From contig NC_079169.1 of assembly GCF_947568905.1 (NCBI RefSeq), positions 88,846,001-88,910,000 on the forward strand: a stretch of DNA of 64,000 nucleotides, read 5' to 3'. The stretch's first letter is position 1; every line of letters begins with the position of its first letter. The notes under the pieces are model-generated. The model was given only the letters and a program-made list of their open reading frames with translations. It was not told where the DNA came from and did no database searches. Both the position numbers and the translations under genes were made by a program. Positions 954 to 55,800 of the stretch are shown piece after piece. This DNA is from Ostrea edulis (lineage: Eukaryota).

Positions 954-13178
<12,225 letters not shown>

Positions 13179-42467: not shown

Positions 42468-45400
42468 CTAATCCTCGGGCTTCTCATCAGCAACCCTATC
42501 CTGGACGTTGTCGGAATCCTCTCCTTGCTTAAGCCTGTTGGATTTCTCCACTCTCAGCTTGCGGCCGCGAATCTCCAGATTTTGCAGGGCATCCAGGGCT
42601 GACTCCATCTCCTGCATTTCCTGGAACTGGAGTAAGGAGTAACCTTTAGCCCCATTCCAGATCACACGGATTGGGTTGACATCCTTACCACGGATTTCTC
42701 CCTTCAATTCGCTGACTCTGACCGACCTCTGGATACTTCCTACGAACAGTGTTGGGATGGGGGCTCGGGTCCTCGGCCCACGGCGACGTCTCGGGCGATA
42801 ATCCTCGTGTTCCTCATCATCTCCGGTATTCTCTGACTCCTCTCTCCTCCGTGGACGACGCCTTCTCATGTTACGTCGCCTGGGCGGACCGCGGCGACCT
42901 TCTCCCTCGCTTTCACCTTCTTCATGGTCATCATCATGGGACTCTTCATTGTTGTCTCCATCGTCTTGGCGACGAGATCCTCTACGTCTGCGGAAACGAC
43001 GGTTCCTCCTATATCTAAAATTACAAAATCAAGGCTGTAAGTCTCTCAATACAAACATAAACAACAGTGCCTCTTAAATCTAAAAATAGAAAATCAAGGC
43101 TGTAAGTCTGTCAACTCAAACATGTATATTTACATTTCCAATGTTTTTGTTAATAGCCATTTCCTCATGAATGTGATAAATATAGTACAGCTATTTTAAC
43201 AGCTGGGAATTCTCAGACATAAGTAAAAATAGAATGTAAATATAAGAAATAAATCTCATTTTTGAAAATACTTGATGGGTGTAAACAGTAATGCTTCATA
43301 CTGGCCATTAAGCTCTAAAGCGTTGCAGTTTATGTCCTCACGTATTTTTCGAAAATGAAATTTATTTCTTAAATATCTTCCACTAAACTATTATGCTTAC
43401 AGAGTATGAGAATTGAACTATATAAATAATGTTGCAGGGGAAAATGCAGACACTATGAACATGGTCTCAAATCTGAAAGTAGGGCTGAAACAATTAATCG
43501 CGGTTCACTCGAACCGCGATTCACGGCATTCGGTTCAATTTTCGGTTCAACATCTTCAAATTTCGATTCGGTTAATGTTTACATTCTTTTCCGGAAATAA
43601 AGAATTCAACACGGATTTGGTTTTTTACCTTACAATTTATTACAAGAAAAATGGCGGACACTAACTCGGGAATCGTGATTAAAAACCCTCCGGCAATCTA
43701 AGGTCCCTTGTATGGAAGCATTTTGGTTTTAAAGAGAACGGAACTGCGGCAGTATGTAGAATTTGTTTCACAGAAATAAATTACCAATGCTCTTGGATAT
43801 TTTATAGCATCTGATATAATAAAGACCATATTCCGTTGTTGAAAACGATGATTTTCAGGGAGGAAATGAAATAAAAACATGAAAGTTGTGTATTTTTTTA
43901 TTATGGTTTATTAGAGTTTTTGACAACTATTGAATTGAATCGAAAATAATCGAATTGTGGCCTAAGAATCGAAAATTGAACCGAACCGTGAGGTACCTGA
44001 ATCGTTTCAGCCCTATCTGAAAGGGGTCTTCATCTGCCTTATCCAAGTATTCTATATAAAATTTCCCAAGGAAAGTTAAGCTATCATGTGTCACAGAAAG
44101 TGCTGATTGATGGACGGAGAGACAGTGTGATTACTATAGGACACCCTCCTTATGGAGGGGTCCTAATCAAACCACCCACCGCATCACTGACCACTGGGTG
44201 ACTTAACAATGAGAGTGTACATAGGACTTAACACTGAATGTGTACCTAGGACTTACATGTAATACTGAGTGTGTACCTAGGACTTAACACTGAGTGTGTA
44301 CCTAGGACTTAACTGAATGTGTACCTAGGACTTAACACTGAGTGTGTACCTAGGACTTAACACTGAATGTGTACCTAGGACTTAATACTGAATGTGTACC
44401 TAGGACTTAACACTGAATGTGTACCTAGGACTTAATACTGAGTGTGTACCTAGGACTTAATACTGAGTGTGTACCTAGTACTTAACACTGAGTGTGTACC
44501 TAGGACTTAATACTGAGTGTGTACATAGGACTTAACACTGAGTGTGTACCTAGGACTTAACACTGAGTGTGTACCTAGGACTTAATACGGAGTGTGTACC
44601 TAGGACTTAATACTGAATGTGTACATAGGACTTAACATTGAGTGTGTACCTAGGACTTAACACTGAGTGTGTACCTAGGACTTAAAACTGAAAGTGTACC
44701 TAGGACTTAATACTGAGTGTGTACCTAGGACTTAATACTGAATGTGTACCTAGGACTTAACACTGAATGTGTACCTAGGACTTAATACTGAGTGTGTACC
44801 TAGGACTTAATACCGAGTGTGTATCTAGGACTTAATACCGAGTGTGTACCTAGGACTTAACACTGAATGTGTACCTAGGACTTAATACTGAATGTGTAAC
44901 TAGGACTTAACACTGAATGTGTACCTAGGACTTAATACTGAATGTGTACCTAGGACTTAACACTGAATGTGTACCTAGGACGAGGCGGTTTGTCATCTCC
45001 ACCCTCCTCTCCATTCTCAGCATACTCTCCTTGATCTTCTTCTGTCTCTCTCCTCTCCCTGTACGGTCCACCTCCTCTACGGCCGCCACGGAACCTCCTG
45101 AATCTACCCCCTCTTCCACGGAACCTTCAGACAGAAAAACGACTATGAGGCATTCAACACATTGCTACCTTAAAATCAATGTTTATATCGTTGCAAACAT
45201 TTAGTGCTTTGGAAAGTCTAATTGTGGCTTGCTTGAAAAGAATACAACCATATGGTGGCGTTGAAATAATCAATTTTCTGTCAATGAAAACAGTATCTTT
45301 CTATAAAATCACAACACTGTATCCTTATCAGAATGTACTGTAAATGTATTACATTCTGCTGTGTTTTCTATTTAATAGTGCCTTTCACGAAAACCAGCTA

Positions 45401-48400
45401 TCGCTAAATCAAGTACATCACTAAATGTCTTGCGTATTTATATATTTTTTTATAGTACATTTAGAAAGCGCTAAATCAAATCTATGCTAACTTGTTGAAA
45501 GAACAAGTTCCACCAAATATTGTACACGCTAAATGTAATACACAAGTTTGCATTGTGGTGATTGTTAATCAGGTTTTTAGGTATACTTCAAACTCATTTA
45601 TCAGATTTTGTGTGATAATCCGATTGTATCATTCATCATTGCTCTCAATTTGTTCGTGGGGGGTACAATAAGTATCTTCCCCTCTCCCTTTGTCACCCCT
45701 GTAGGAAGCCTAAGACTAAACTCTGGAATAATGCTCTACATAGAATGTTACCAGCACTGTAAAATTAGATGAATGACTAACCTTACAAGACATGCAGTAT
45801 TTTTGCTGCAATGTGCTGAGCACAAGAGGATGACAGAAAAGGTCAGAGTACGAAGGAGAAAAATCGCTAAAACCCATCATGTGGCCGAATTGCAGTTTGG
45901 AAAATTATACATGCTTGCATTCAAGAAGTAAAAACATGCACATACTTAATATAGTTTATAAGTATGAAGCTTTGAATGGCCGCAATAGGTATTTAGTGTG
46001 ATAATGACCTTGACCTTTGGATTTCAACAGTAACATGAATCTTGAATGTCATCAGGATTTGAAGTCTGATAAACATGCACCAGCAAGTACATGAATAAAA
46101 GTTAGAGGCAAGCTCAAATCTACAGTGTATAGTGAAAAAAAAGACCTTGACCTTTGACCTCAAAATAGGAACCTTCCTCTTTTGGCTGTTATCAAAATAT
46201 GCAAGTCTGACAAAGACGCACCAAGTAGTATGAAAGTTAGAAACCGGACAAGCCCAAATCTATGGCAAAGTGACCTTGACTTTCGACCTCAAAATAAATA
46301 GAAACCTTCCTCTTTTGGATGTGATCATGTTATGTAAGTCTCATAAAGATGCACCAAAAAGTATGAAAGTTAGAGACCAGACAAGCTAATTGTGGACATC
46401 GCCCGCCCAACTGAATGCCCATCCTTCGCCAATTTAAAAGCCGAGATTTGCTATGCAACTCGGCTAAAAAAGTATAAATTGAAAAAAATCTAGAATTCTC
46501 ATTATGGTGTGTATTTGATGAAACAATATTGGGAGTGACATTCTTCCTTTATAACAAAACAGTGAGCAAAGTCCTCAATCAGCTGTGCTGATGACAAAGA
46601 ACATTCATTTACCTGGGACGTCCGTAATCCGAATCCATGCGCCTTCTGTCCTCCCTCTCGGGGATGTCCTCTTCTTCACGGCCGTCCTGCAAGGTTACAT
46701 CCTTTCCTGCCTCCTTTTCCTTCTCCCTCAGGTGTTTTAAGATAGGAACCTGGCGAACCTAAAGAAAACATGGCAAACCTACATGTATTTTACACACAAT
46801 TTCTGCTTGAAAATTCCGTTTTTAATTGCGGAAAGAAGCCCCTCTAAATGTTATGATAATTTTTGTAGAAAACTGTACTCTATATCTCTAACCTTCTCTG
46901 GGGTCAGCTTGGACCAGATAATTCCTTTTGGTTTAGCCTTCGTACGGTTACACTTAATGACTTGTGTTTCTGTGATGATATAGTCCACAACAACATCATG
47001 CTCCTCCATGAGGGACTCCGGAATGTCTACTATCTGAGTGTCGTGGACAGTGGTCACAACAATGGTGTCTGGTGTCACTGCTCCCATTGCACACATCATG
47101 GCATACTCCAAGTCAGCAAAACCCTCACCTTTACCAATTCTATATCCTGCCGTACAGATTTATAAACTTTAAATGCATCATCTAGTAAATATCATATCAG
47201 TGTCTGGGTTTTTTTTTAACCAATGGACAATCTTATTTTATTCAAAATAGTGTTTAAGATTTATGCTCCCAAATTGGAGGCGGGGGGCAAACAAAATTGT
47301 TTCTAATCTATCTGTAACTTTAATCATAACTTTGGAACTACACAAAGTGAAGGTCACCAAAACTTCTTTCAAATATCAAAATGTCCAAACGTGATTTTAT
47401 GATTTTTTTATGAAAAAAAAAATGGACGTTATGTAATTATAATTTTTTAATATACATTTTTGGGAGTTACATATGCAGTTGAAATTGCATAAAAGTAATT
47501 TCCATGTTCATAAATGTGCTTTTTTCTTTCTTTTTAATACTTTTTGTGTTTAAAATTTGTACAAATTAGTCTACAGGAGTCTAAATGTATTCATAGCTAA
47601 GTGTCTCTTTATATCTAAATTGTTATGGTGGGTTATGAAATTTATCACCACTTCATTTCTGACAGCTTAAAATAACTATATTTCTAAATTCAATACAAAA
47701 ATAAAACTGTTACGATTAAATTGTTCATTTATCAAAACTTGCCCACAGATTAATGAAGACAATATAACTCATGACTTCATCATGTCAATAATCATAATAA
47801 CTATGTACACACCTATATCATTATAATGTCTACTACTTTCACTCTGAACTATTCATATTCACTGTAATTACATGCTTTTGATATTTTCATGTCTTTAACT
47901 TTTGCAATGTGTATACTTGTAAAAGCAAGCAATACTTTGTCAAATTGAGTGACAGAATCCCAAAGCTGACAATACATTTTCAGTTTAAATATGCTGACAC
48001 ACAATTAGTTAACATGTGAATCCCCCTAAAGAGATGCATGATATAGCAATGCTTAATGTATTCCAACTACATGTAGGTTCTCTTAGTATCAAACTTGGTT
48101 AGCTCTCAATCAATGCGAAATAAAGTACATGTACATGTATATATGACATCTTTGTATTCATCACCATTAAGTTTCCCTTAAAACAGAGGCAAAAATTGCT
48201 TTTCAAAAATTATACATCTTTGTTTCTTCCTTACCTTCATTGGAGACAGCAACTGATCCGATGACAATCAAATCTACCTTGACCTTGGCCTCTAAGCCAA
48301 TGGGGACGCTGTACTCCTTCAAACCCTGAAAGATGGCACTTCTTTAAATTTCTTTCAAGAATTCCTCCTGGCACTAAACAAACTACAAGAGGCCCATGGG

Positions 48401-51400
48401 CCTGAATGGTGACCTGAGTGTGCAGCGTTTTCATTCTCTAGAAACCATTGTGTTACCTGTATGCTTTTTATACTTCTCCATTTCTATACATTGTATTAGA
48501 TGATAGATATGTTGGTATAACTGTCATACACAATTGATAATTCAGAATTCTTATATAGGTGATTAAGTTTCAGTGATTTTCTATTCAAGTTCTAAAAGGG
48601 CAAATAAATTTTTACAGTTTTCAAAAAGGTCTCAATGCTCATTAAAAGTAATCATGCAAACAGTGTGCCTGCTTGATGTCCAGGAGTAAAGATTTTCTAC
48701 AATATATTGCATTTTCAACATATGATCAACTAGGTCCCACCCAGGAACCTGTACTCAAGGGTAGTAAATTTCACACTGCTCATGTTGTCTGCTTGACGTC
48801 CAGCGGTAAAGAAGTTTTTCTAAGTACTGCATTTTTAATACATAGTGTACATACCAATTTAGCCCCATCCTGGTATCTGAACCCTGGAATCATATACATC
48901 ACACTTTTGGCCATGACAATCATGCAAACATTTTGCCTCCTTTATGTCCAGAAGTAAAGAAGATTACTAAGTTATAATGCATTTTCAATGTGACCACTTA
49001 ACCCCATCCTAGGGTTTGAACCCTGAACCCAGGGGTCATGAATTTCAGTTTTGGAGGAGGGCTCAATGCTAATTATAATGATACAAACATTTTGCTTCCA
49101 TGATCAGGGCTCTAAATACTCGCAAAATACGAGTACATTTGAAAAATAGCGAGTAAAAATAGTGGACACTCGAAAATCTTAGCGAGTGGTGATTTACAAA
49201 CTATGATCGTATCGTATCCGTTTTATACAGTGATGCGCTATTCGCTTTTCTTGAACTTGCACTCTGAATCATACAAATGCTTACATTAACGACCGATTTC
49301 AACAACCGTTTCTATCCGGGTTTTTCTTTTATGATTTTTTATGAAACTCGGAGTCAAACAAATGCTTCAGAGGTCGGACATCGGATATCGACATGTGGCA
49401 CGAGTCCTGTTCACCTATAGGGGTGATTAAATTGAATTCCAAGTATGACGTTTTTGTTATTCATTTATCTAAAAAAATATATCGGAGTCTATATTTTACC
49501 AATTCTTCCTGTGGTTATTTTTATCAGAATCATGAGAATGTCCTATCTAAGTTTATTGTCATATTGAGGTTGGGTTATAGTGATGACACGAGTGCATTGC
49601 TCACCGCGTAGACGATTATCTAAAAAGTTCATGGGGCTCGTGATCGTGCTGCTTATAAAACCATGAGTCCGGGATTCGCTTTAAAATATCACTAGTGATA
49701 ACCTTGATGTGGCATGAAATTGGAAGACTGGATCTAGACCTGCGGTAAACAAGTTGTGGATTAGAGGTGCGATAATCAAGAGACCTAAACATTGCACCAT
49801 ATGACTTACGTAACTTAGTGTCTTGTCCAAACGATGCCTGTTGACCCACTAGGCTCAGTAATGATGGGGAAAATCATTGATTTACAAAAATATATAAAAA
49901 AAGAGCACTGCTTCATTATTTTTATTTTAGCTTGTAGTTTTTCATTTTAGCCTGTGGATTTTTTACCCACAGGCTAAAATTAGCCTGTGGTAGAAAAAGT
50001 TAATTTCGACCCCTGATGATGTCCAGAAGTAAAGAAGATTTTCTATGATGTAATGCATTTTTAATATGAGACCAACTTAGCTATACCCTGGGAACATGAA
50101 ACCTTTTCTCACAGTTTTGGCACAGGGCTCATTGCTCATTATAATCATGCTAACAGTTTGACTACTTAATGTCCAAGAAGATTTCTGAAGATTACATTAA
50201 TTTTTATGGTTTTGGCCACACCGCTAATACCAGGGACCAACTTAGCCACACCCCTAAGGCCCCAGGGAGACAGTGTCCACGAGAAGCTGAAAATGTTCAA
50301 AAGTTTACGAATTCTGTACATCAAGCAAATGCATCACAATCATGTGTGAACATACTGCATGCTGAAGATATTTCAACAGGTATATTCAACCTGTCGATTA
50401 TTTTTTTCTGAGCAGGAGTGGAATCAGAATCTCATCTTTCAATAGATGACAGTTCAAATCATTGATACTTTATACCATATATATATCAGTATACCATAGG
50501 TACATTTTATGCGATAGTCGCAAAATTTAAAATTAACAAAATTTATCAATATTTTCATTATATAAGAAACAGTTTGCCCCAAATCACATGTCAAAACACT
50601 CATTCTAGTCTTCAACCTAATTCAATTGTCAACAAACATGCATGAAAATTTCCAAAAGGTTACATAAAAATATATTTACAATTCTGTACTTTAGAAGAGA
50701 ACGACAAAAGAAAGCAATCTATTTACACAGGTATGCATATCGATTTGTTTGCAGCAGAAGATCCAAAGAAAAATAATCAGGTTGAAGAGAGGGTCGAACA
50801 AAATTTGAAAAATCTTCCATAGAAATATGTAATACATTGTGATTATCCTTTGTTTCTACACGATGTGTGATATTTTAGTTTGTCTGTTAACAGGTCACAT
50901 GTATCTTGGCATGGAATAACGAGGGCATAGAATGAGGGAAAAAGAAAGTTGTTGCATGCCAAAGACAGGAGCATCACAATTATCAATCTAATTAACCAGA
51001 CTATATAATTAACTAGACTATCAGCGTAAATGTTAAGAGATCTCATTACCTGAGAGGTGGAGCAGTAGCGGAGAATCTCCTTCCCACATCCTTGAGGAGG
51101 CAACAGTTTGTTGAACAGTCCATGACGCAAACGTGGAGTTGGTACCAACAGCGTCTTCTCAGCCTGGTAAAGAAACACAGAGATCTAGATTCAGCACATT
51201 AAAGAACAGAGAGGACCTAGACTTATCACATTAAAGAAACAGAGAGATCTAGACTCAGCACATTTAAAGAAACAGAGAGACCTAGATTCAGTACATTAAA
51301 GAAACAGAGAGACCTAGACTTATCACATTAAAGAAACAGAGAGATCTAGACTCAGCACATTAAAGAAACAGAGAGACCTAGACGCAGCACATTAGAGAAA

Positions 51401-52829
51401 CAGAGAGACCTAGATTCAGTACATTAAAGAAACAGAGAGACCTAGACTTACATGTAGCAAATCAAAGGAACAGAGAGACCTAGATTCAGCTCATTAAAGA
51501 AACAGAGACCTAGATTCAGTACATTAAAGAAACAGAGACCTCGACTCAGCACATTGAAGAATCACAGAGACCTAGACACCGCATGCTTAAGTTAAATCTA
51601 TGGTTTATTTGGGTTTGCTCTCTTACCTCCATAGTAAGAAATCTAGCATTTTCCTGTGGTTTATCTGGGTTGATTTTAACAGTCTGGGCTCTCTTAAATA
51701 CATCCAGTTCTGTCATCTTCTCAGCAGCTGTGGCAGCTCCCTACAAACATTTAGTATCATTTACCGCCATATTCATTCCAAACGTCTCTAAAATACACGT
51801 ACATTATGTGATAAATCATTTCTGGGACTTTTATAGCATATTTTCATTTATCAAGTATCATTTATTTGAATAGAAATTTTGGTGCTTTCATTTTGTTGTG
51901 AATTTTCCTCATCAGCCAAAAAAAGCAACATTTGAAGTGCCCCTATGTGATACACAAAAACAGAGCCGTGGATACTTTCAACAGAATCAAGCTGTCCCTG
52001 GCTCAGTACTAAAAGACATACAATGAAACCTGTCTAATCCAACATTCACCGGGAGACAAAACTCTGATGTCCCTACATGTACAGTGAAACCTGTCTAATC
52101 CGACATTCACCATGAGACAAATTTAATGTCGAAACGGTGTTGGAATAAACAATGTAAAAATCACAAAAATATGAAATTGAGAATGAAAATAAGGACCGGA
52201 ATGCTCAGTGAAATGGATTCCACAAGAGTTGGATTAGACAGTTTCCACTGTATATGTAAATAAAGGCCTGAGTCAGGCAGACAGCAAATCTCAGTCAAAA
52301 ACCTTTAACTAGAGAAAAGGAAACATACCACAAAGTTTGGAATCCTGTGATGGACAGGGCGGGGGAACTGTACGAGGTCATTATCCTCCAGAAAATTCCA
52401 CACGGACTTACGAATGGCTTCTTTTGTCACTTCTACAACAACAGAAAGTACCAGATATTGTACACTTTACCATAGCTTAACACTGTAGACCAACCTTTAT
52501 TTGTGACATCTTTGACACTTGGCTTGTGAAGATGAAATAAACATACCTTTCCCCATCTCTTGGACAGTTAAAATAAACATACCTTTCCCCATCTCTTGGA
52601 CAGTTAAAATAAACATACCTTTCCCCATCTCTTGGACAGTTAAAATAAACATACCTTTCCCCATCTCTTGGACAGTTAAAATAAACATACCTTTCCCCAT
52701 CTCTTGGACAGTTAAAATAAACATACCTTTCCCCATCTCTTGGACAGTTAAAATAAACATACCTTTCCCCATCTCTTGGACAGATTCGTTTGGGGTTTTG
52801 GTTTGCTTTGGGGGCATTGTGCTCGTCAT
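42468..52829 (-). CDS. MTHFSD: Methenyltetrahydrofolate synthetase domain-containing protein (5-FTHF cyclo-ligase-like domain + C-terminal RRM), 9 coding exons, 528 aa
   Basis: Exons 52763-52829, 52329-52432, 51627-51740, 51050-51163, 48235-48325, 46893-47146, 46613-46758, 44975-45124, 42468-43014; GT-AG, phases consistent, 1587 nt. Motifs [51 protein letters not shown]; RRM LFVGSI...AKGYSLLQF...[11 protein letters not shown]. The start codon and first exon are less certain. Confidence 0.92.
43480..44015 (+). mobile_element. hAT deletion derivative with perfect 8-bp TSD and BED-finger remnant
   Basis: TAGGGCTG...CAGCCCTA; TCTGAAAG duplicated; internal frameshifted reading MADTNSG.../[24 protein letters not shown] (43651-43784). 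Confidence 0.9.
44205..44981. repeat. 25-bp minisatellite containing the MTHFSD exon 8 donor
   Basis: ACTTAACACTGAGTGTGTACCTAGG, about 30 copies; the minus strand of each unit reads TCCTAG|GTACAC. Confidence 0.95.
45990..46472 (-). mobile_element. HINE-like element related to 62594-63610
   Basis: Minus-strand 5' end TTTAGCCGAGTTGCA...CTCGGCT and internal GGTCAAGGTC-type units. Confidence 0.6.
48381..50310. mobile_element. Degenerate HINE (same family as 39913) with nested MITE
   Basis: Starts ACAAGAGGCCCATGGGCC; ~165-bp degenerate monomers; ends near AAAATGTTCAAAAGTTTAC. Confidence 0.65.
49105..50015. mobile_element. CAGGG-terminal TIR element with 5-bp TSD (hAT5-like)
   Basis: ATGAT|CAGGGCTCT...TTTCGACCCCTG|ATGAT. 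Confidence 0.8.
51168..51590. repeat. ~32-bp minisatellite filling MTHFSD intron 3
   Basis: TAAAGAAACAGAGAGACCTAGATTCAGCACAT, about 12 copies, starting at the acceptor polypyrimidine tract. Confidence 0.92.
52082..52250. mobile_element. Tc1/mariner-pogo-type MITE
   Basis: TA|CAGTGAAACCTGTCTAATCC...GGATTAGACAGTTTCCACTG|TA. Confidence 0.75.
52535..52783. repeat. 36-bp perfect tandem repeat spanning the MTHFSD exon 1 donor
   Basis: AAATAAACATACCTTTCCCCATCTCTTGGACAGTTA, about 7 copies; exon-end positions at 52547, 52583, 52619, 52655, 52691, 52727, 52763. Confidence 0.97.
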
Positions 52830-55800
52830 CAAAGCAAAAAGGCGAATCTGTGGCTTGTTCTATCACTCCTTGAGAATTTCTAGACCAGTTTTAGATGATC
52901 ATATCACACTAAAAATAAACACAAACACAGATCAACAATTATTATCTGATTATTAATTCAAAATTCAATTAATAACACACACCAAATTTCACATCAATGC
53001 ATGGTCCCCTAACTATAACACACATTATAACATATTTACCTACTCCACGACATCTACACTGTACTCTACTGAAATCTAACACTCCATACAAGATCTAACA
53101 AGCTTTTTCATTGGCTACTGCATAATGACCAATATGTACTTTCACCGTAACACTTTCCTTGATACAATGTAATGTTTTCTGTGATGAAATTGTTTTCTGT
53201 GATAAAACAAGGCCGAGCGTGTTTATTATAGTTCGTATAACACCTCGCTGTTGATAAACTGCTGTACTATCATCCTACATTGATAAGAAAAATTTCACAT
53301 TATAGGGCAGGTTATAAAAGATAACTGCTATCTCTTCTGACACAACACTTATCTACTGTAAATGAAACATTAATTTTACCCTTTAAACTGTACATTTTTC
53401 AATGTTCAAAAGTTAAAACAGATCTTTCACCAGTCCCTTTCCTTACATTGTGTGTTTCAAGGATGTCTAAGGTAAAAGATATTCTCCAAATTAAGTAGTG
53501 TAGGATTTTTGCAAGTACTATTATATACATGATATATACACCCACTCACTAGCATCAGTTAATAATGAATATATTAACTGTTTAAAAGAGATTATTTTTA
53601 ATACCAGTAATCTGTCTTTCGTTTTGTATTTCAAGAAATCAGACCTCATATCAAAAGATTAAATTTGAAGCAGACAAAAATAAGAATCAATCATTTTCCA
53701 CACATTACATATTATACTAGAAATCTATTGTTTTAAATTGTTTCTAAGAAAAATCATAAATACATACTTCATACAGACTGCAACACAACAGCTGTTCCAG
53801 AAGAACATGATATGAATTTAAATCTACACTGCTTATTAATTTGACATATCTACCCCAAAGGCCTGTGGTTCTTCTAAAGAAGCTTTCCAAATAATTTTAT
53901 TATTACTCGGGGTGTGCAATTGAAATAATTAACTACTAGCCCAGGGGCTAGTGGCAGAAACAAAGTTTTTAGCCCTAGATCTGTCGGTCAATAGCTCCTG
54001 GACTATAGACAGTACATACATGGTAAAAAAAGCCTAAATATGGAGTTAATTATAATACAAGCAAGTTGAATTACAAATATACAAAGAATGGTCAGTTTGA
54101 TACCGTTTCTTATTAATCAATTTGTTTGGAAGCATCTGGCCAAGTGGTGAATAATTCAGCTTCATTACGTCATGTTTAAAAATATTTGTTTCCCCTTCTT
54201 CCGACCCTAAACTTCAGAGGAGGGTAAGTAAGTAGGTAAAAAGGATGTTTTTAGCCAGCAGAATTTTATCAAATATGAAATTTCCCATGACCATTAACAA
54301 AATCTGTACCAAAACATCATAAAGCACATCATTCCATGTTTCCTCGCCAAGTCATTTCTTGCGTATAGTTCTGCTTTGATTTTACAATTAGGGGAAGGTG
54401 TTATTTCGGACAGTACTCCATGCATTTCGGAAATGCTGATTATCTAACCACTGGACATAAGACATATTATAAACGGTTGATTCGTTGAACACTCAAGTTT
54501 CATCGGATTTTTTCCTGCAATTTATGCCACATATAAATATTTAAATGTTGTAACTACGGACAATGCGGTTGTTTATTTTGGACACATGGTGTTTTAACTT
54601 CGGACAGTTTGTAAATTCGGTTGCTGTCTTTTATTTCGTGGTTTACAGGTATTTTTTCATTTTTGCTCATTATGACAATTTATATTTTGAAGTGATTTTG
54701 ATTCTGGATATAATTTTTTAATCATATCGGTAACTTTTACCATAAAACTAGGTTACGACAGGGACTTGACTTTGCTTATGAAACAAAATGGATGCTGGCA
54801 ACTTTTACAGCAGTGTTAGTGAAGGTCATGTATTTAAATAAACCAATCAGAGCTGAGTTACACATGCACATATAACAGATGTTTTCCAGTTTGTAAATAT
54901 ATTAAGTTTGTAAATAAGTTTAAATTGAGAATAAATAACAATAGAAACATAGATATTCTTTCTTATTGACTGTCGGAAGTATCACACCCATCCGAAATAA
55001 CAGCCGAAGAACACCTGCACGCTCTAACACCCTGAAGTCTTGTGTCTCCTCGCTTCTAGTGTAGACGACATTCCTCCATGTTGATGTAGCAGGCCAGTGA
55101 GGCAACCTCTATTCATACTGTTTTTAAAATTTTAAATCGAAACTAACTACAATATAGAAACTTCTGGTCATTATCAAATACTGATCTGTACCGGAAAGGA
55201 CCTTGGAACTTTTCCGGAAATAAAAAAAAAAAAAAACTTGGCCAGAATGACGGAATAAATCTAAAAACTTTTGGGTCGGTGGGACTTTCTCAGACAAATC
55301 AGCATATAAACGATTGCAAGAATATCAAGATTTATATAATGATTATGCAGATATAGAAAATTTTCTGTGCAGATCCATTCCTTATTTAGTCAATGAAAAG
55401 TTTGATTTCATGCAAACTGCAAGGAAACTTGTTTGTCAAATAGTCACGAAGTTGATTGGCATAAAAAAATGTCAATACTAAAAGCCAAGAGATTGGAAAC
55501 AACTATTATATCTAAAGATAATCAAACAATAAACATGCTAAAAATGGAAATCATACACCATAATTATAAAGCTGTACGGAGTGACAGATGGATAAATGAC
55601 AGACGAATACATCCCCACGCATCACTGTGCCTGGTAAGTGACACTCAGTTGGTTATGGAATAAGCAGAAATTGTGTTTAGACTAATACATTTTCATGTTT
55701 CCGAACATATATGAAATAAAAATTACCGTACAGTCCTGAATATGAAATAAAATGTTGACACATAGTAAGGGTTTCATGCACCATAGATATACTTCATCAA

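What the first reader, a model, noticed from the sequence alone, without database searches (positions are those of the whole stretch)
52535..52829. In-frame 36-bp array gives MTHFSD seven identical splice donors: a VNTR-tunable N-terminus
Each unit holds the last ~22 nt of exon 1 plus the donor GAAAG|GTATGT. The unit is 36 nt and stop-free in the coding frame, so every donor (52763, 52727, 52691, 52655, 52619, 52583, 52547) splices in phase 1 to exon 2 and adds 0-6 copies of [12 protein letters not shown]. The most distal donor leaves a 114-nt intron, which is still spliceable. The copies are identical, so the expansion is recent. Donor choice and allele copy number could set the protein's N-terminal length, adding amphipathic Met-rich repeats to a protein described as stress-granule-associated and RNA-binding (function is inference).
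Basis: partly seen in the sequence, partly recalled or inferred. Interest (0 to 1): 0.8.

Follow-up and report, generated by a model that had tools for sequence, protein, structure and literature searches.

The report
Splice-donor minisatellite in oyster MTHFSD
An oyster gene has the end of its first coding exon plus the splice signal copied head-to-tail seven times, but the RNA data on hand show only the first copy in use, so this is a young example of a known, usually silent repeat type and not a shown dial for protein length.

Summary
Window 52535-52783 is a perfect 36-bp x 6.9 tandem array on the minus strand. It repeats the last 21 nt of the first coding exon of an MTHFSD-like gene plus its donor, giving AAAG|GTATGT seven times, in frame. 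An independent DNA run carries it at about 6-7 copies, so it is not an assembly artefact. A related oyster has the same exon with one donor and no repeat, so the array is derived and young.

The "tunable N-terminus" reading is not supported. In two RNA-like runs the only exon 1-exon 2 joint is 52763 to 52432, the first donor, at the same depth as the flanking exons. No RNA contig lies inside the array. No stored protein of 66-210 residues (the range that search covers) carries the repeat peptide. Contigs cannot exclude rare isoforms, and the genotype of the RNA animals is unknown.

This is a "mirage" or F7-IVS7-type minisatellite, known from human F7, IFI6, CBS, LMNB2 and PDGFA and from amphioxus genes. 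Downstream copies there are mostly or wholly silent. The same gene holds three more tandem repeats that span splice junctions. Earlier notes of this scan report the same repeat type repeatedly elsewhere in this genome. Verdict: a new member of a known kind, of low interest.

The parts
52535..52783 (-). 36-bp x 6.9 perfect tandem array. Each unit holds the last 21 nt of the first coding exon, the donor with 12 nt of intron, and a 3-nt TAA filler.
   Evidence: DNA run X4 cyclic contig at about 5.6x the flank depth
52763..52909 (-). First coding exon. In-frame ATGs at 52829-52827, 52817-52815 and 52772-52770. A 3-codon uORF lies at 52903-52892. The exon ends at the authentic donor (last exon base 52763).
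   Evidence: RNA contigs of X18 and X19 cover 52768-52909. Translation. From the conserved ATG to the donor it is identical to the relative L012.
52433..52762 (-). Intron 1 as spliced in the RNA contigs (330 nt, GT..AG). It contains six pseudo-donors, with last exon-like bases at 52727, 52691, 52655, 52619, 52583 and 52547.
   Evidence: joint 52432-52763 in X18, depth 2954, 29 nt on the exon-1 side reaching unique exon sequence
52329..52432 (-). Exon 2 ([35 protein letters not shown]). It has no in-frame ATG, so translation must start upstream.
   Evidence: joints 52432-52763 and 51739-52328
51627..51740 (-). Exon 3
   Evidence: RNA contigs and joints; sequence
51050..51163 (-). Exon 4
   Evidence: RNA contigs and joint 51162-51626 in X18 and X19; sequence
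46854..47159 (-). Open frame holding the exon that encodes the C-terminal part of the 5-formyltetrahydrofolate cyclo-ligase-like domain
   Evidence: PF01812, E 5.6e-10, 39.9 bits, above the cut-off; single copy in the genome
42471..43014 (-). Last exon: Arg-rich stretch plus an RRM-like domain, then the stop
   Evidence: PF00076, E 7.5e-4, 19.8 bits, just under the cut-off; frame continuity from the RGG exon
44200..44981 (-). Second donor-spanning minisatellite of the same gene: 25 bp x 31. The first unit spans the RGG-exon donor (exon ends at 44975, CCTAG|GTACAC). It holds 26 intact TAG|GTA copies, and the unit length shifts the frame.
51168..51577 (-). 32-bp x 12.7 array that fills intron 3. 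Its last unit runs across the exon-4 acceptor. The copies read ATGT-GCTGAG where the real site reads CCAG|GCTGAG.
42994..43123 (-). 65-bp x 2 tandem duplication of the last intron's acceptor plus the first 21 nt or so of the last exon. Using the upstream copy would run into a stop.

Best explanation
This is a young, lineage-specific minisatellite whose first unit spans the boundary between the first coding exon and intron 1 of the oyster's single-copy MTHFSD-like gene. Such repeats are called 'mirage' or F7-IVS7-type repeats. A 33-nt piece (21 nt of exon plus 12 nt of intron) was duplicated with a 3-nt filler, and the resulting 36-nt unit was then amplified to about 7 copies by slippage or unequal exchange (inferred). 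The spliceosome uses the first, most upstream donor (shown for the RNA contigs on hand). The other six identical donors therefore lie inside a 330-nt intron as silent pseudo-sites and are removed with it. The likely reason is 5'-to-3' oriented selection of the first competent donor after the exon, as shown experimentally for human F7 (inferred by analogy). Because the unit is in frame, occasional use of a later donor would add 12 residues per unit and would not create a premature stop. That would make the array mild and tolerated; nothing here points to selection for it.
For: Array anatomy and perfect identity. The frame is open through the array. The gene is MTHFSD-like and single copy. In RNA-like run X18 a contig joins 52432 to 52763 with 29 nt on the exon-1 side. 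Eight of those lie beyond the repeated part, so it is donor 1 and no other. Its depth is 2954, against 2706-2753 for exon 2 contigs and 2271-3483 for exon 1 contigs. The loose ends in X19 agree. Bins 52491-52703 have depth 0 in both runs. DNA run X4 holds the array at about 5.6x flank depth. The orthologous locus of a related oyster, L012, has the same exon end (AAAG|GT), one donor and no tandem repeat. The pre-mRNA is less structured than its shuffles (z = +3.7), so no fold hides the later donors. Three more junction-spanning repeats lie in the same gene. Two of them, including the other donor-reiterating one, have units that are not multiples of 3, so a reiterated copy used there would break the frame; the gene nevertheless keeps an open frame through the first sites. 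Literature: only the most upstream of 5-9 identical donors is used in F7, and the same holds for LMNB2 and PDGFA (PMC1557585). Amphioxus mirages do not disturb splicing (PMC3087553).
Against: All RNA evidence comes from assembled contigs of two runs of one study, labelled as a different organism code (B) from the DNA runs (A). Contigs drop rare variants. It is not known whether those animals carry the array, since no RNA contig lies on intron 1 at all. In IFI6 and CBS the second and third reiterated donors are used as well (PMC1557585).
Confidence: 0.75

Rival explanations
1. One reading: several of the seven donors are used, so donor choice and VNTR copy number produce MTHFSD isoforms with 0-6 extra [12 protein letters not shown] units at the N-terminus (an IFI6-like multi-donor minisatellite).
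For: All donors are identical, strong (AAG|GTATGT, also the donor type of exon 2) and in phase. No stop occurs in the frame. The shortest intron would be 114 nt. IFI6 and CBS use two pseudo-sites besides the authentic donor (PMC1557585). Contigs cannot exclude minor isoforms.
Against: Only the donor-1 joint is seen, at full exon depth. No array sequence appears in RNA contigs of two runs with exon depths in the thousands. The search with the read-through frame, limited to proteins of 66-210 aa, found no protein carrying the peptide. The other donor-reiterating array in the same gene is out of frame and would be harmful if used. The added peptide is intron-derived with a hydrophobic MFILTV core and shows no sign of selection.
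Confidence: 0.13
2. The array is a functional intronic element: a cluster of seven U1 snRNP binding sites close to the 5' end of the gene that boosts transcription or protects the nascent RNA from premature cleavage. The donors would serve as U1 landing pads, not as splice sites.
For: Seven perfect donor sequences lie within about 360 nt of the transcript's 5' boundary.
Against: No direct evidence. The related species manages with one donor. Similar arrays lie deep in the same gene, far from the promoter. Tandem arrays cover 14% of the window, so a neutral origin suffices. Contig depths cannot rank expression.
Confidence: 0.07
3. The array, or its copy number, is an assembly artefact.
For: Perfect repeats can be mis-sized by assemblers. 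The intron-side contig of X4 stops earlier than a k=31 graph predicts.
Against: An independent DNA run gives a 66-nt cyclic repeat contig at 92x against 15-18x in the flanks, which fits about 6-7 copies. The exon-side contig enters the array by exactly 30 nt, as expected.
Confidence: 0.03

Closest known systems
Human F7 intron 7 37-bp VNTR minisatellite (Borensztajn et al. 2006, PMC1557585)
   Same: The first monomer spans the exon-intron boundary. It has 5-9 strictly identical donors with a unit of about 36 nt. Only the most upstream donor is used, and the later ones are competent but silent pseudo-sites.
   Different: The F7 unit is 37 nt (out of frame), holds only 4 nt of exon and sits at an internal exon. 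F7 polymorphism and silence are shown by experiment. Here silence is seen only in RNA contigs and polymorphism is untested.
Human IFI6 (6-16) intron 2 minisatellite and CBS intron 13 31-bp VNTR (as described in PMC1557585)
   Same: Minisatellites reiterate the splice donor. In these two genes the two pseudo-sites next to the authentic donor are also used.
   Different: No use of later donors is seen here. IFI6 has 25 pseudo-sites and CBS 15-20 repeats.
'Mirage' minisatellites of amphioxus (Adh3, globins; Ebner et al. 2010, PMC3087553)
   Same: Tandem duplications of exon-intron boundaries at either the 5' or 3' side, with units of 10-160 bp and length-unstable arrays. They do not disturb regular splicing and recur in many genes of one invertebrate genome.
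   Different: A different phylum. Here the array is perfect, in frame and at the first coding exon.

Membership tests
Splice-donor ('mirage' / F7-IVS7-type) minisatellite | Tandem array whose first monomer spans an exon-intron boundary | tested here: met
   The array 52535-52783 starts 21 nt inside the exon. The exon-intron junction at 52763|52762 is fixed by an RNA joint.
Splice-donor ('mirage' / F7-IVS7-type) minisatellite | [quoted passage not shown] | tested here: met
   Seven identical AAAG|GTATGT sites at 36-nt spacing.
Splice-donor ('mirage' / F7-IVS7-type) minisatellite | Regular splicing from the most upstream donor, with later copies silent or nearly so | tested here: inconclusive
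   Only the donor-1 joint is seen, at full exon depth, and no array sequence appears in RNA contigs of X18 or X19. These are contigs, the genotype of the RNA animals is unknown, and rare isoforms would be dropped.
Splice-donor ('mirage' / F7-IVS7-type) minisatellite | Copy-number polymorphism (VNTR) | tested here: inconclusive
   The depth ratio in X4 is about 5.6, against 6.1 expected for the reference. This fits 6-7 copies but lies within noise. No second sample could be laid.
IFI6-type multi-donor minisatellite that yields in-frame isoforms | Unit length a multiple of 3 with an open frame | tested here: met
   36 nt, with no stop in the frame.
IFI6-type multi-donor minisatellite that yields in-frame isoforms | Constitutive use of more than one reiterated donor | tested here: not met
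   No joint from donors 2-7 and zero RNA depth inside the array. No protein of 66-210 aa with the repeat peptide. Minor use is not excluded.
MTHFSD (methenyltetrahydrofolate synthetase domain containing) | N-terminal 5-formyltetrahydrofolate cyclo-ligase-like domain | tested here: met
   PF01812, E 5.6e-10, 39.9 bits against a cut-off of 27, on the exon at 46854-47159.
MTHFSD (methenyltetrahydrofolate synthetase domain containing) | C-terminal RNA recognition motif in the same gene | tested here: inconclusive
   PF00076, E 7.5e-4, 19.8 bits against a cut-off of 20.7, on the last exon. The frame is continuous from the preceding exon.

The most novel reading that the evidence does not exclude
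In animals that carry the array, a small share of transcripts uses the second or third donor, as in human IFI6 and CBS. The result would be MTHFSD isoforms with one or two extra 12-residue units, whose share depends on tissue or on array length. That would make this a natural in-frame reporter of 5' splice-site leak in a mollusc.
Probability: 0.15. Interest if true: 0.4.

Novelty: new member of a known kind. Interest (0 to 1): 0.2.

Why it matters
On its own it matters little. It is one more minisatellite that reiterates a splice donor, a repeat type described in human genes and in amphioxus, and the available RNA shows ordinary splicing from the first donor. Its modest value is as a clean natural test case: seven perfectly identical, in-frame donors in a single-copy gene. 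Any leak to later donors would escape nonsense-mediated decay and show up as a 36-nt ladder. It also adds to the picture that such junction-spanning repeats are frequent in this oyster genome. There are four in this one gene, and that recurrence is the more interesting question.

Tried and rejected
1. A word search of the protein collection with the read-through frame of exon 1 plus the array (120 aa) gave 2988 candidates and none significant. No stored protein of 66-210 aa carries the repeat peptide or this N-terminus.
2. Two scans of metagenome contigs gave no match: one for the unit-to-unit junction and one for the conserved exon-1 end.
3. Look-ups of P0001, P0005 and P0006 for their contigs found nothing on record. 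P0004 contigs start inside the relative's intron 1 and were uninformative about exon 1. P0007 gave the useful locus L012.
4. I tested whether RNA secondary structure hides the later donors and rejected it. The 511-nt pre-mRNA piece folds worse than all 100 shuffles (z = +3.7).
5. An alternative 5' sequence leaves exon 1 at 52811 in one X19 contig. It is absent from the window and is a dispersed repeat with at least 45 copies in the genome. It is a chimeric contig or a TE-insertion allele, not an alternative exon of this gene.
6. A paralogue as the source of the RNA contigs is rejected, because the cyclo-ligase exon is single copy.
7. RNA run X20 had no contig on the stretch.
8. The original IFI6 minisatellite paper is not held.
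9. The large representative-protein search, structure prediction and the third word search were not used. The protein's identity was not in question, and those searches could not test donor use.
Exons were handled one by one by reference.

Full report
THE OBSERVATION

Window 52535-52783 is a tandem array of period 36 with 6.9 copies, 100% matches, no indels and TRF score 498. Read on the minus strand, the sequence runs in three parts:
- unique exon sequence ending in ...AACGAAT;
- seven times CTGTCCAAGAGATGGGGAAAG|GTATGTTTATTT, with successive copies joined by TAA;
- unique intron sequence starting CATCTTCAC.

The motif AAAG|GTATGT occurs seven times. The array is 6 x 36 + 33 nt. The 33 nt (21 of exon, 12 of intron) are what the two flanks share. 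The 3-nt TAA linker matches neither the exon flank (AAT) nor the intron flank (CAT), so it looks like filler from the first duplication. The reading frame from the exon's ATGs stays open through all units and gives [12 protein letters not shown] per unit. The stretch occurs once in the 895-Mb genome.

THE GENE

The gene lies on the minus strand, from about 52909 down to 42471. Open-frame pieces carry clear MTHFSD-like sequence.
- The exon at 46854-47159 matches the 5-formyltetrahydrofolate cyclo-ligase family (PF01812, E 5.6e-10).
- The last exon matches an RRM weakly (PF00076, 19.8 bits, just under the cut-off).
- The cyclo-ligase exon is single copy in the genome.
- Exon 2 (52432-52329) has no in-frame ATG, so translation must start in the exon that carries the array's first unit. 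That exon has in-frame ATGs at 52829, 52817 and 52772.

Every search used single exons by reference.

IS THE ARRAY REAL?

Sequencing runs that hold this stretch come from oysters; several are labelled "oyster metagenome". In DNA run X4, from another study, three contigs bear on the array (table 8):
- The exon-side contig enters the array by exactly 30 nt (from 52754), as a k=31 graph predicts.
- The repeat appears as a 66-nt contig. That is the length of a cyclic unitig for a perfect 36-nt period (36+31-1).
- That contig has depth 92.2, against 15.3 and 17.9 in the flanks.

The ratio of about 5.6 compares with 6.1 expected for the reference array, so this sample carries about 6-7 units. The array is not an assembly artefact. 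One oddity remains. The intron-side contig stops at 52545, only 11 nt into the array, which may mean a variant in the last pseudo-donor of that sample.

WHICH DONOR IS USED?

Runs X18 and X19 behave as RNA. Only exons are covered, at depths in the thousands, with canonical GT..AG joints for introns 1, 2 and 3 in X18 and intron 3 in X19 (tables 2 and 5).
- The only joint across intron 1 is 52432 to 52763, skipping 330 nt.
- The X18 contig that carries it has 29 nt on the exon-1 side. This is 8 nt beyond the repeated 21 nt, into sequence that only the first copy has, so it is donor 1.
- Its depth (2954) equals that of the exon 2 contigs (2706-2753) and the exon 1 contigs (2271-3483). The first-donor junction therefore accounts for essentially all of the signal.
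- The loose ends of X19 at 52434 and 52763 fit the same junction.
- Bins 52491-52703, the array interior and the unit-to-unit junctions, have zero RNA depth in both runs.

The limits are real. These are contigs, which drop rare variants. Both runs belong to one study and carry a different organism code from the DNA runs, although the exons are 99-100% identical. No RNA contig covers intron 1, so I cannot show that these animals carry the array. The third RNA run, X20, had nothing on the stretch.

Two further checks bear on this.
- A word search with the read-through frame found no stored protein of 66-210 aa carrying the repeat peptide.
- The pre-mRNA piece from exon 1 to exon 2 is less structured than its shuffles (z = +3.7), so no fold explains the donor choice.

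AGE

A search with the exon 2 frame found genomic ORFs of a related oyster (88% identity). One of its contigs, L012, reaches 1.7 kb upstream. Three observations matter:
- Its first coding exon is identical to the window's from GAGCACAATG... through ...GGGGAAAG|GT.
- After the GT the intron diverges at once (GTGAGTCAGAATTC...).
- There is one donor and no tandem repeat, and intron 1 is about 776 nt.

The array is therefore derived in the window's lineage.

WHAT IT IS

Literature in the held library describes this class exactly. Borensztajn et al. 2006 (PMC1557585) report the following:
- Human F7 intron 7 has a 37-bp VNTR whose first monomer spans the exon 7 boundary. It has 5-9 identical donors, and only the most upstream is used. 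Mutagenesis showed a 5'-to-3' oriented selection in which the pseudo-sites are competent but do not compete.
- LMNB2 and PDGFA also use only the authentic site.
- IFI6 and CBS also use the two next pseudo-sites.

In amphioxus, tandem duplications of exon-intron boundaries are called "mirages". They recur in several genes and do not disturb splicing (PMC3087553). The oyster array meets the structural criteria of this class, and as far as contigs can show it behaves like F7.

CONTEXT IN THE SAME GENE

Tandem arrays cover 14% of the window in 27 arrays. Three more of them span splice junctions of this same gene.
- A 25-bp x 31 array (44200-44981) has a first unit that spans the donor of the Arg/Gly-rich exon (exon ends at 44975, CCTAG|GTACAC). 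It holds 26 intact TAG|GTA copies. Only the first keeps the frame into the last exon, since 25 nt shifts the frame.
- A 32-bp x 12.7 array fills intron 3. Its last unit runs across the exon 4 acceptor, and the copies read ATGT where the real site reads CCAG.
- A 65-bp duplication repeats the last acceptor plus the first 21 nt or so of the last exon. The upstream copy would lead into a stop.

A back-of-envelope estimate of mine, not a tool result, assumes about 16 splice junctions in the gene. Randomly placed arrays would then put about 0.8 array edges within 25 nt of a junction, against the four seen (Poisson p about 0.01).

Earlier notes of this scan report the same repeat type repeatedly elsewhere in this genome and name the species as the European flat oyster. 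I did not verify the species or their genome-wide counts.

MECHANISM AND VERDICT

- Shown: the array, its frame, its presence in an independent sample, its absence in a relative, and a first-donor junction at full depth in RNA contigs.
- Inferred: origin by duplication with filler followed by slippage or unequal exchange; silence of donors 2-7 through oriented first-site selection or exon definition; and tolerance, because any leak is in frame.

The "VNTR-tunable N-terminus" remains a possibility at low level only (about 0.13-0.15). A role as a cluster of U1 binding sites is speculation (about 0.07). This is a new member of a known kind, of low interest by itself. The recurrence of junction-spanning repeats in this genome is the more interesting thread.

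Noticed in passing
window 44200-44981 (minus strand): 25-bp x 31 minisatellite (90% matches) whose first unit spans the donor of the Arg/Gly-rich exon of the same gene (exon ends at 44975, CCTAG|GTACAC). It holds 26 intact TAG|GTA copies. The unit shifts the frame, so only the first donor keeps the open frame into the last exon.
   Followed up: partly
window 51168-51577 (minus strand): 32-bp x 12.7 array that fills nearly all of intron 3. Its last unit continues across the exon-4 acceptor into the first 6 nt of the exon. The copies read ATGT-GCTGAG where the real site reads CCAG|GCTGAG, so they lack the AG.
   Followed up: partly
window 42994-43123 (minus strand): 65-bp tandem duplication of the last intron's branch/polypyrimidine/AG region plus the first 21 nt or so of the last exon. 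It gives two acceptors 65 nt apart, and the upstream one would run into a TGA.
   Followed up: partly
window 52892-52910 and L012 about 845-865: A 3-codon uORF (ATG-ATC-ATC-TAA; ATG-TTC-ATC-TAA in the relative) and a polypyrimidine-AG just upstream of it are conserved between the two oysters. RNA contigs stop at 52909, right after that AG, so a non-coding leader exon further upstream is possible.
   Followed up: no
window 52764-52826 vs L012 about 935-996: The short N-terminal coding exon is identical between the two oyster species from the conserved ATG to the donor (about 55 nt, plus some 10 nt upstream). Exon 2 with its flanks differs by about 15% and the promoter region by about 13-23%. 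This hints at extra constraint on this piece.
   Followed up: no
window 52811 (RNA run X19): One X19 contig leaves exon 1 at 52811 into a sequence that is a dispersed repeat with at least 45 copies in the genome. It is either a chimeric contig or an allele with a transposon insertion in the first coding exon. It would remove the two upstream ATGs and leave the ATG inside the repeated unit.
   Followed up: partly
window 52545-52546 (DNA run X4): The intron-side contig of X4 ends 11 nt into the array, not the 30 nt a k=31 graph predicts. This suggests a variant at the last pseudo-donor, or another array end, in that sample.
   Followed up: no
window 52000-52200: A stretch in intron 2 has DNA contig depth up to about 5000, against about 17 in its surroundings, and many divergent joints in X4. 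It is a high-copy dispersed repeat.
   Followed up: no
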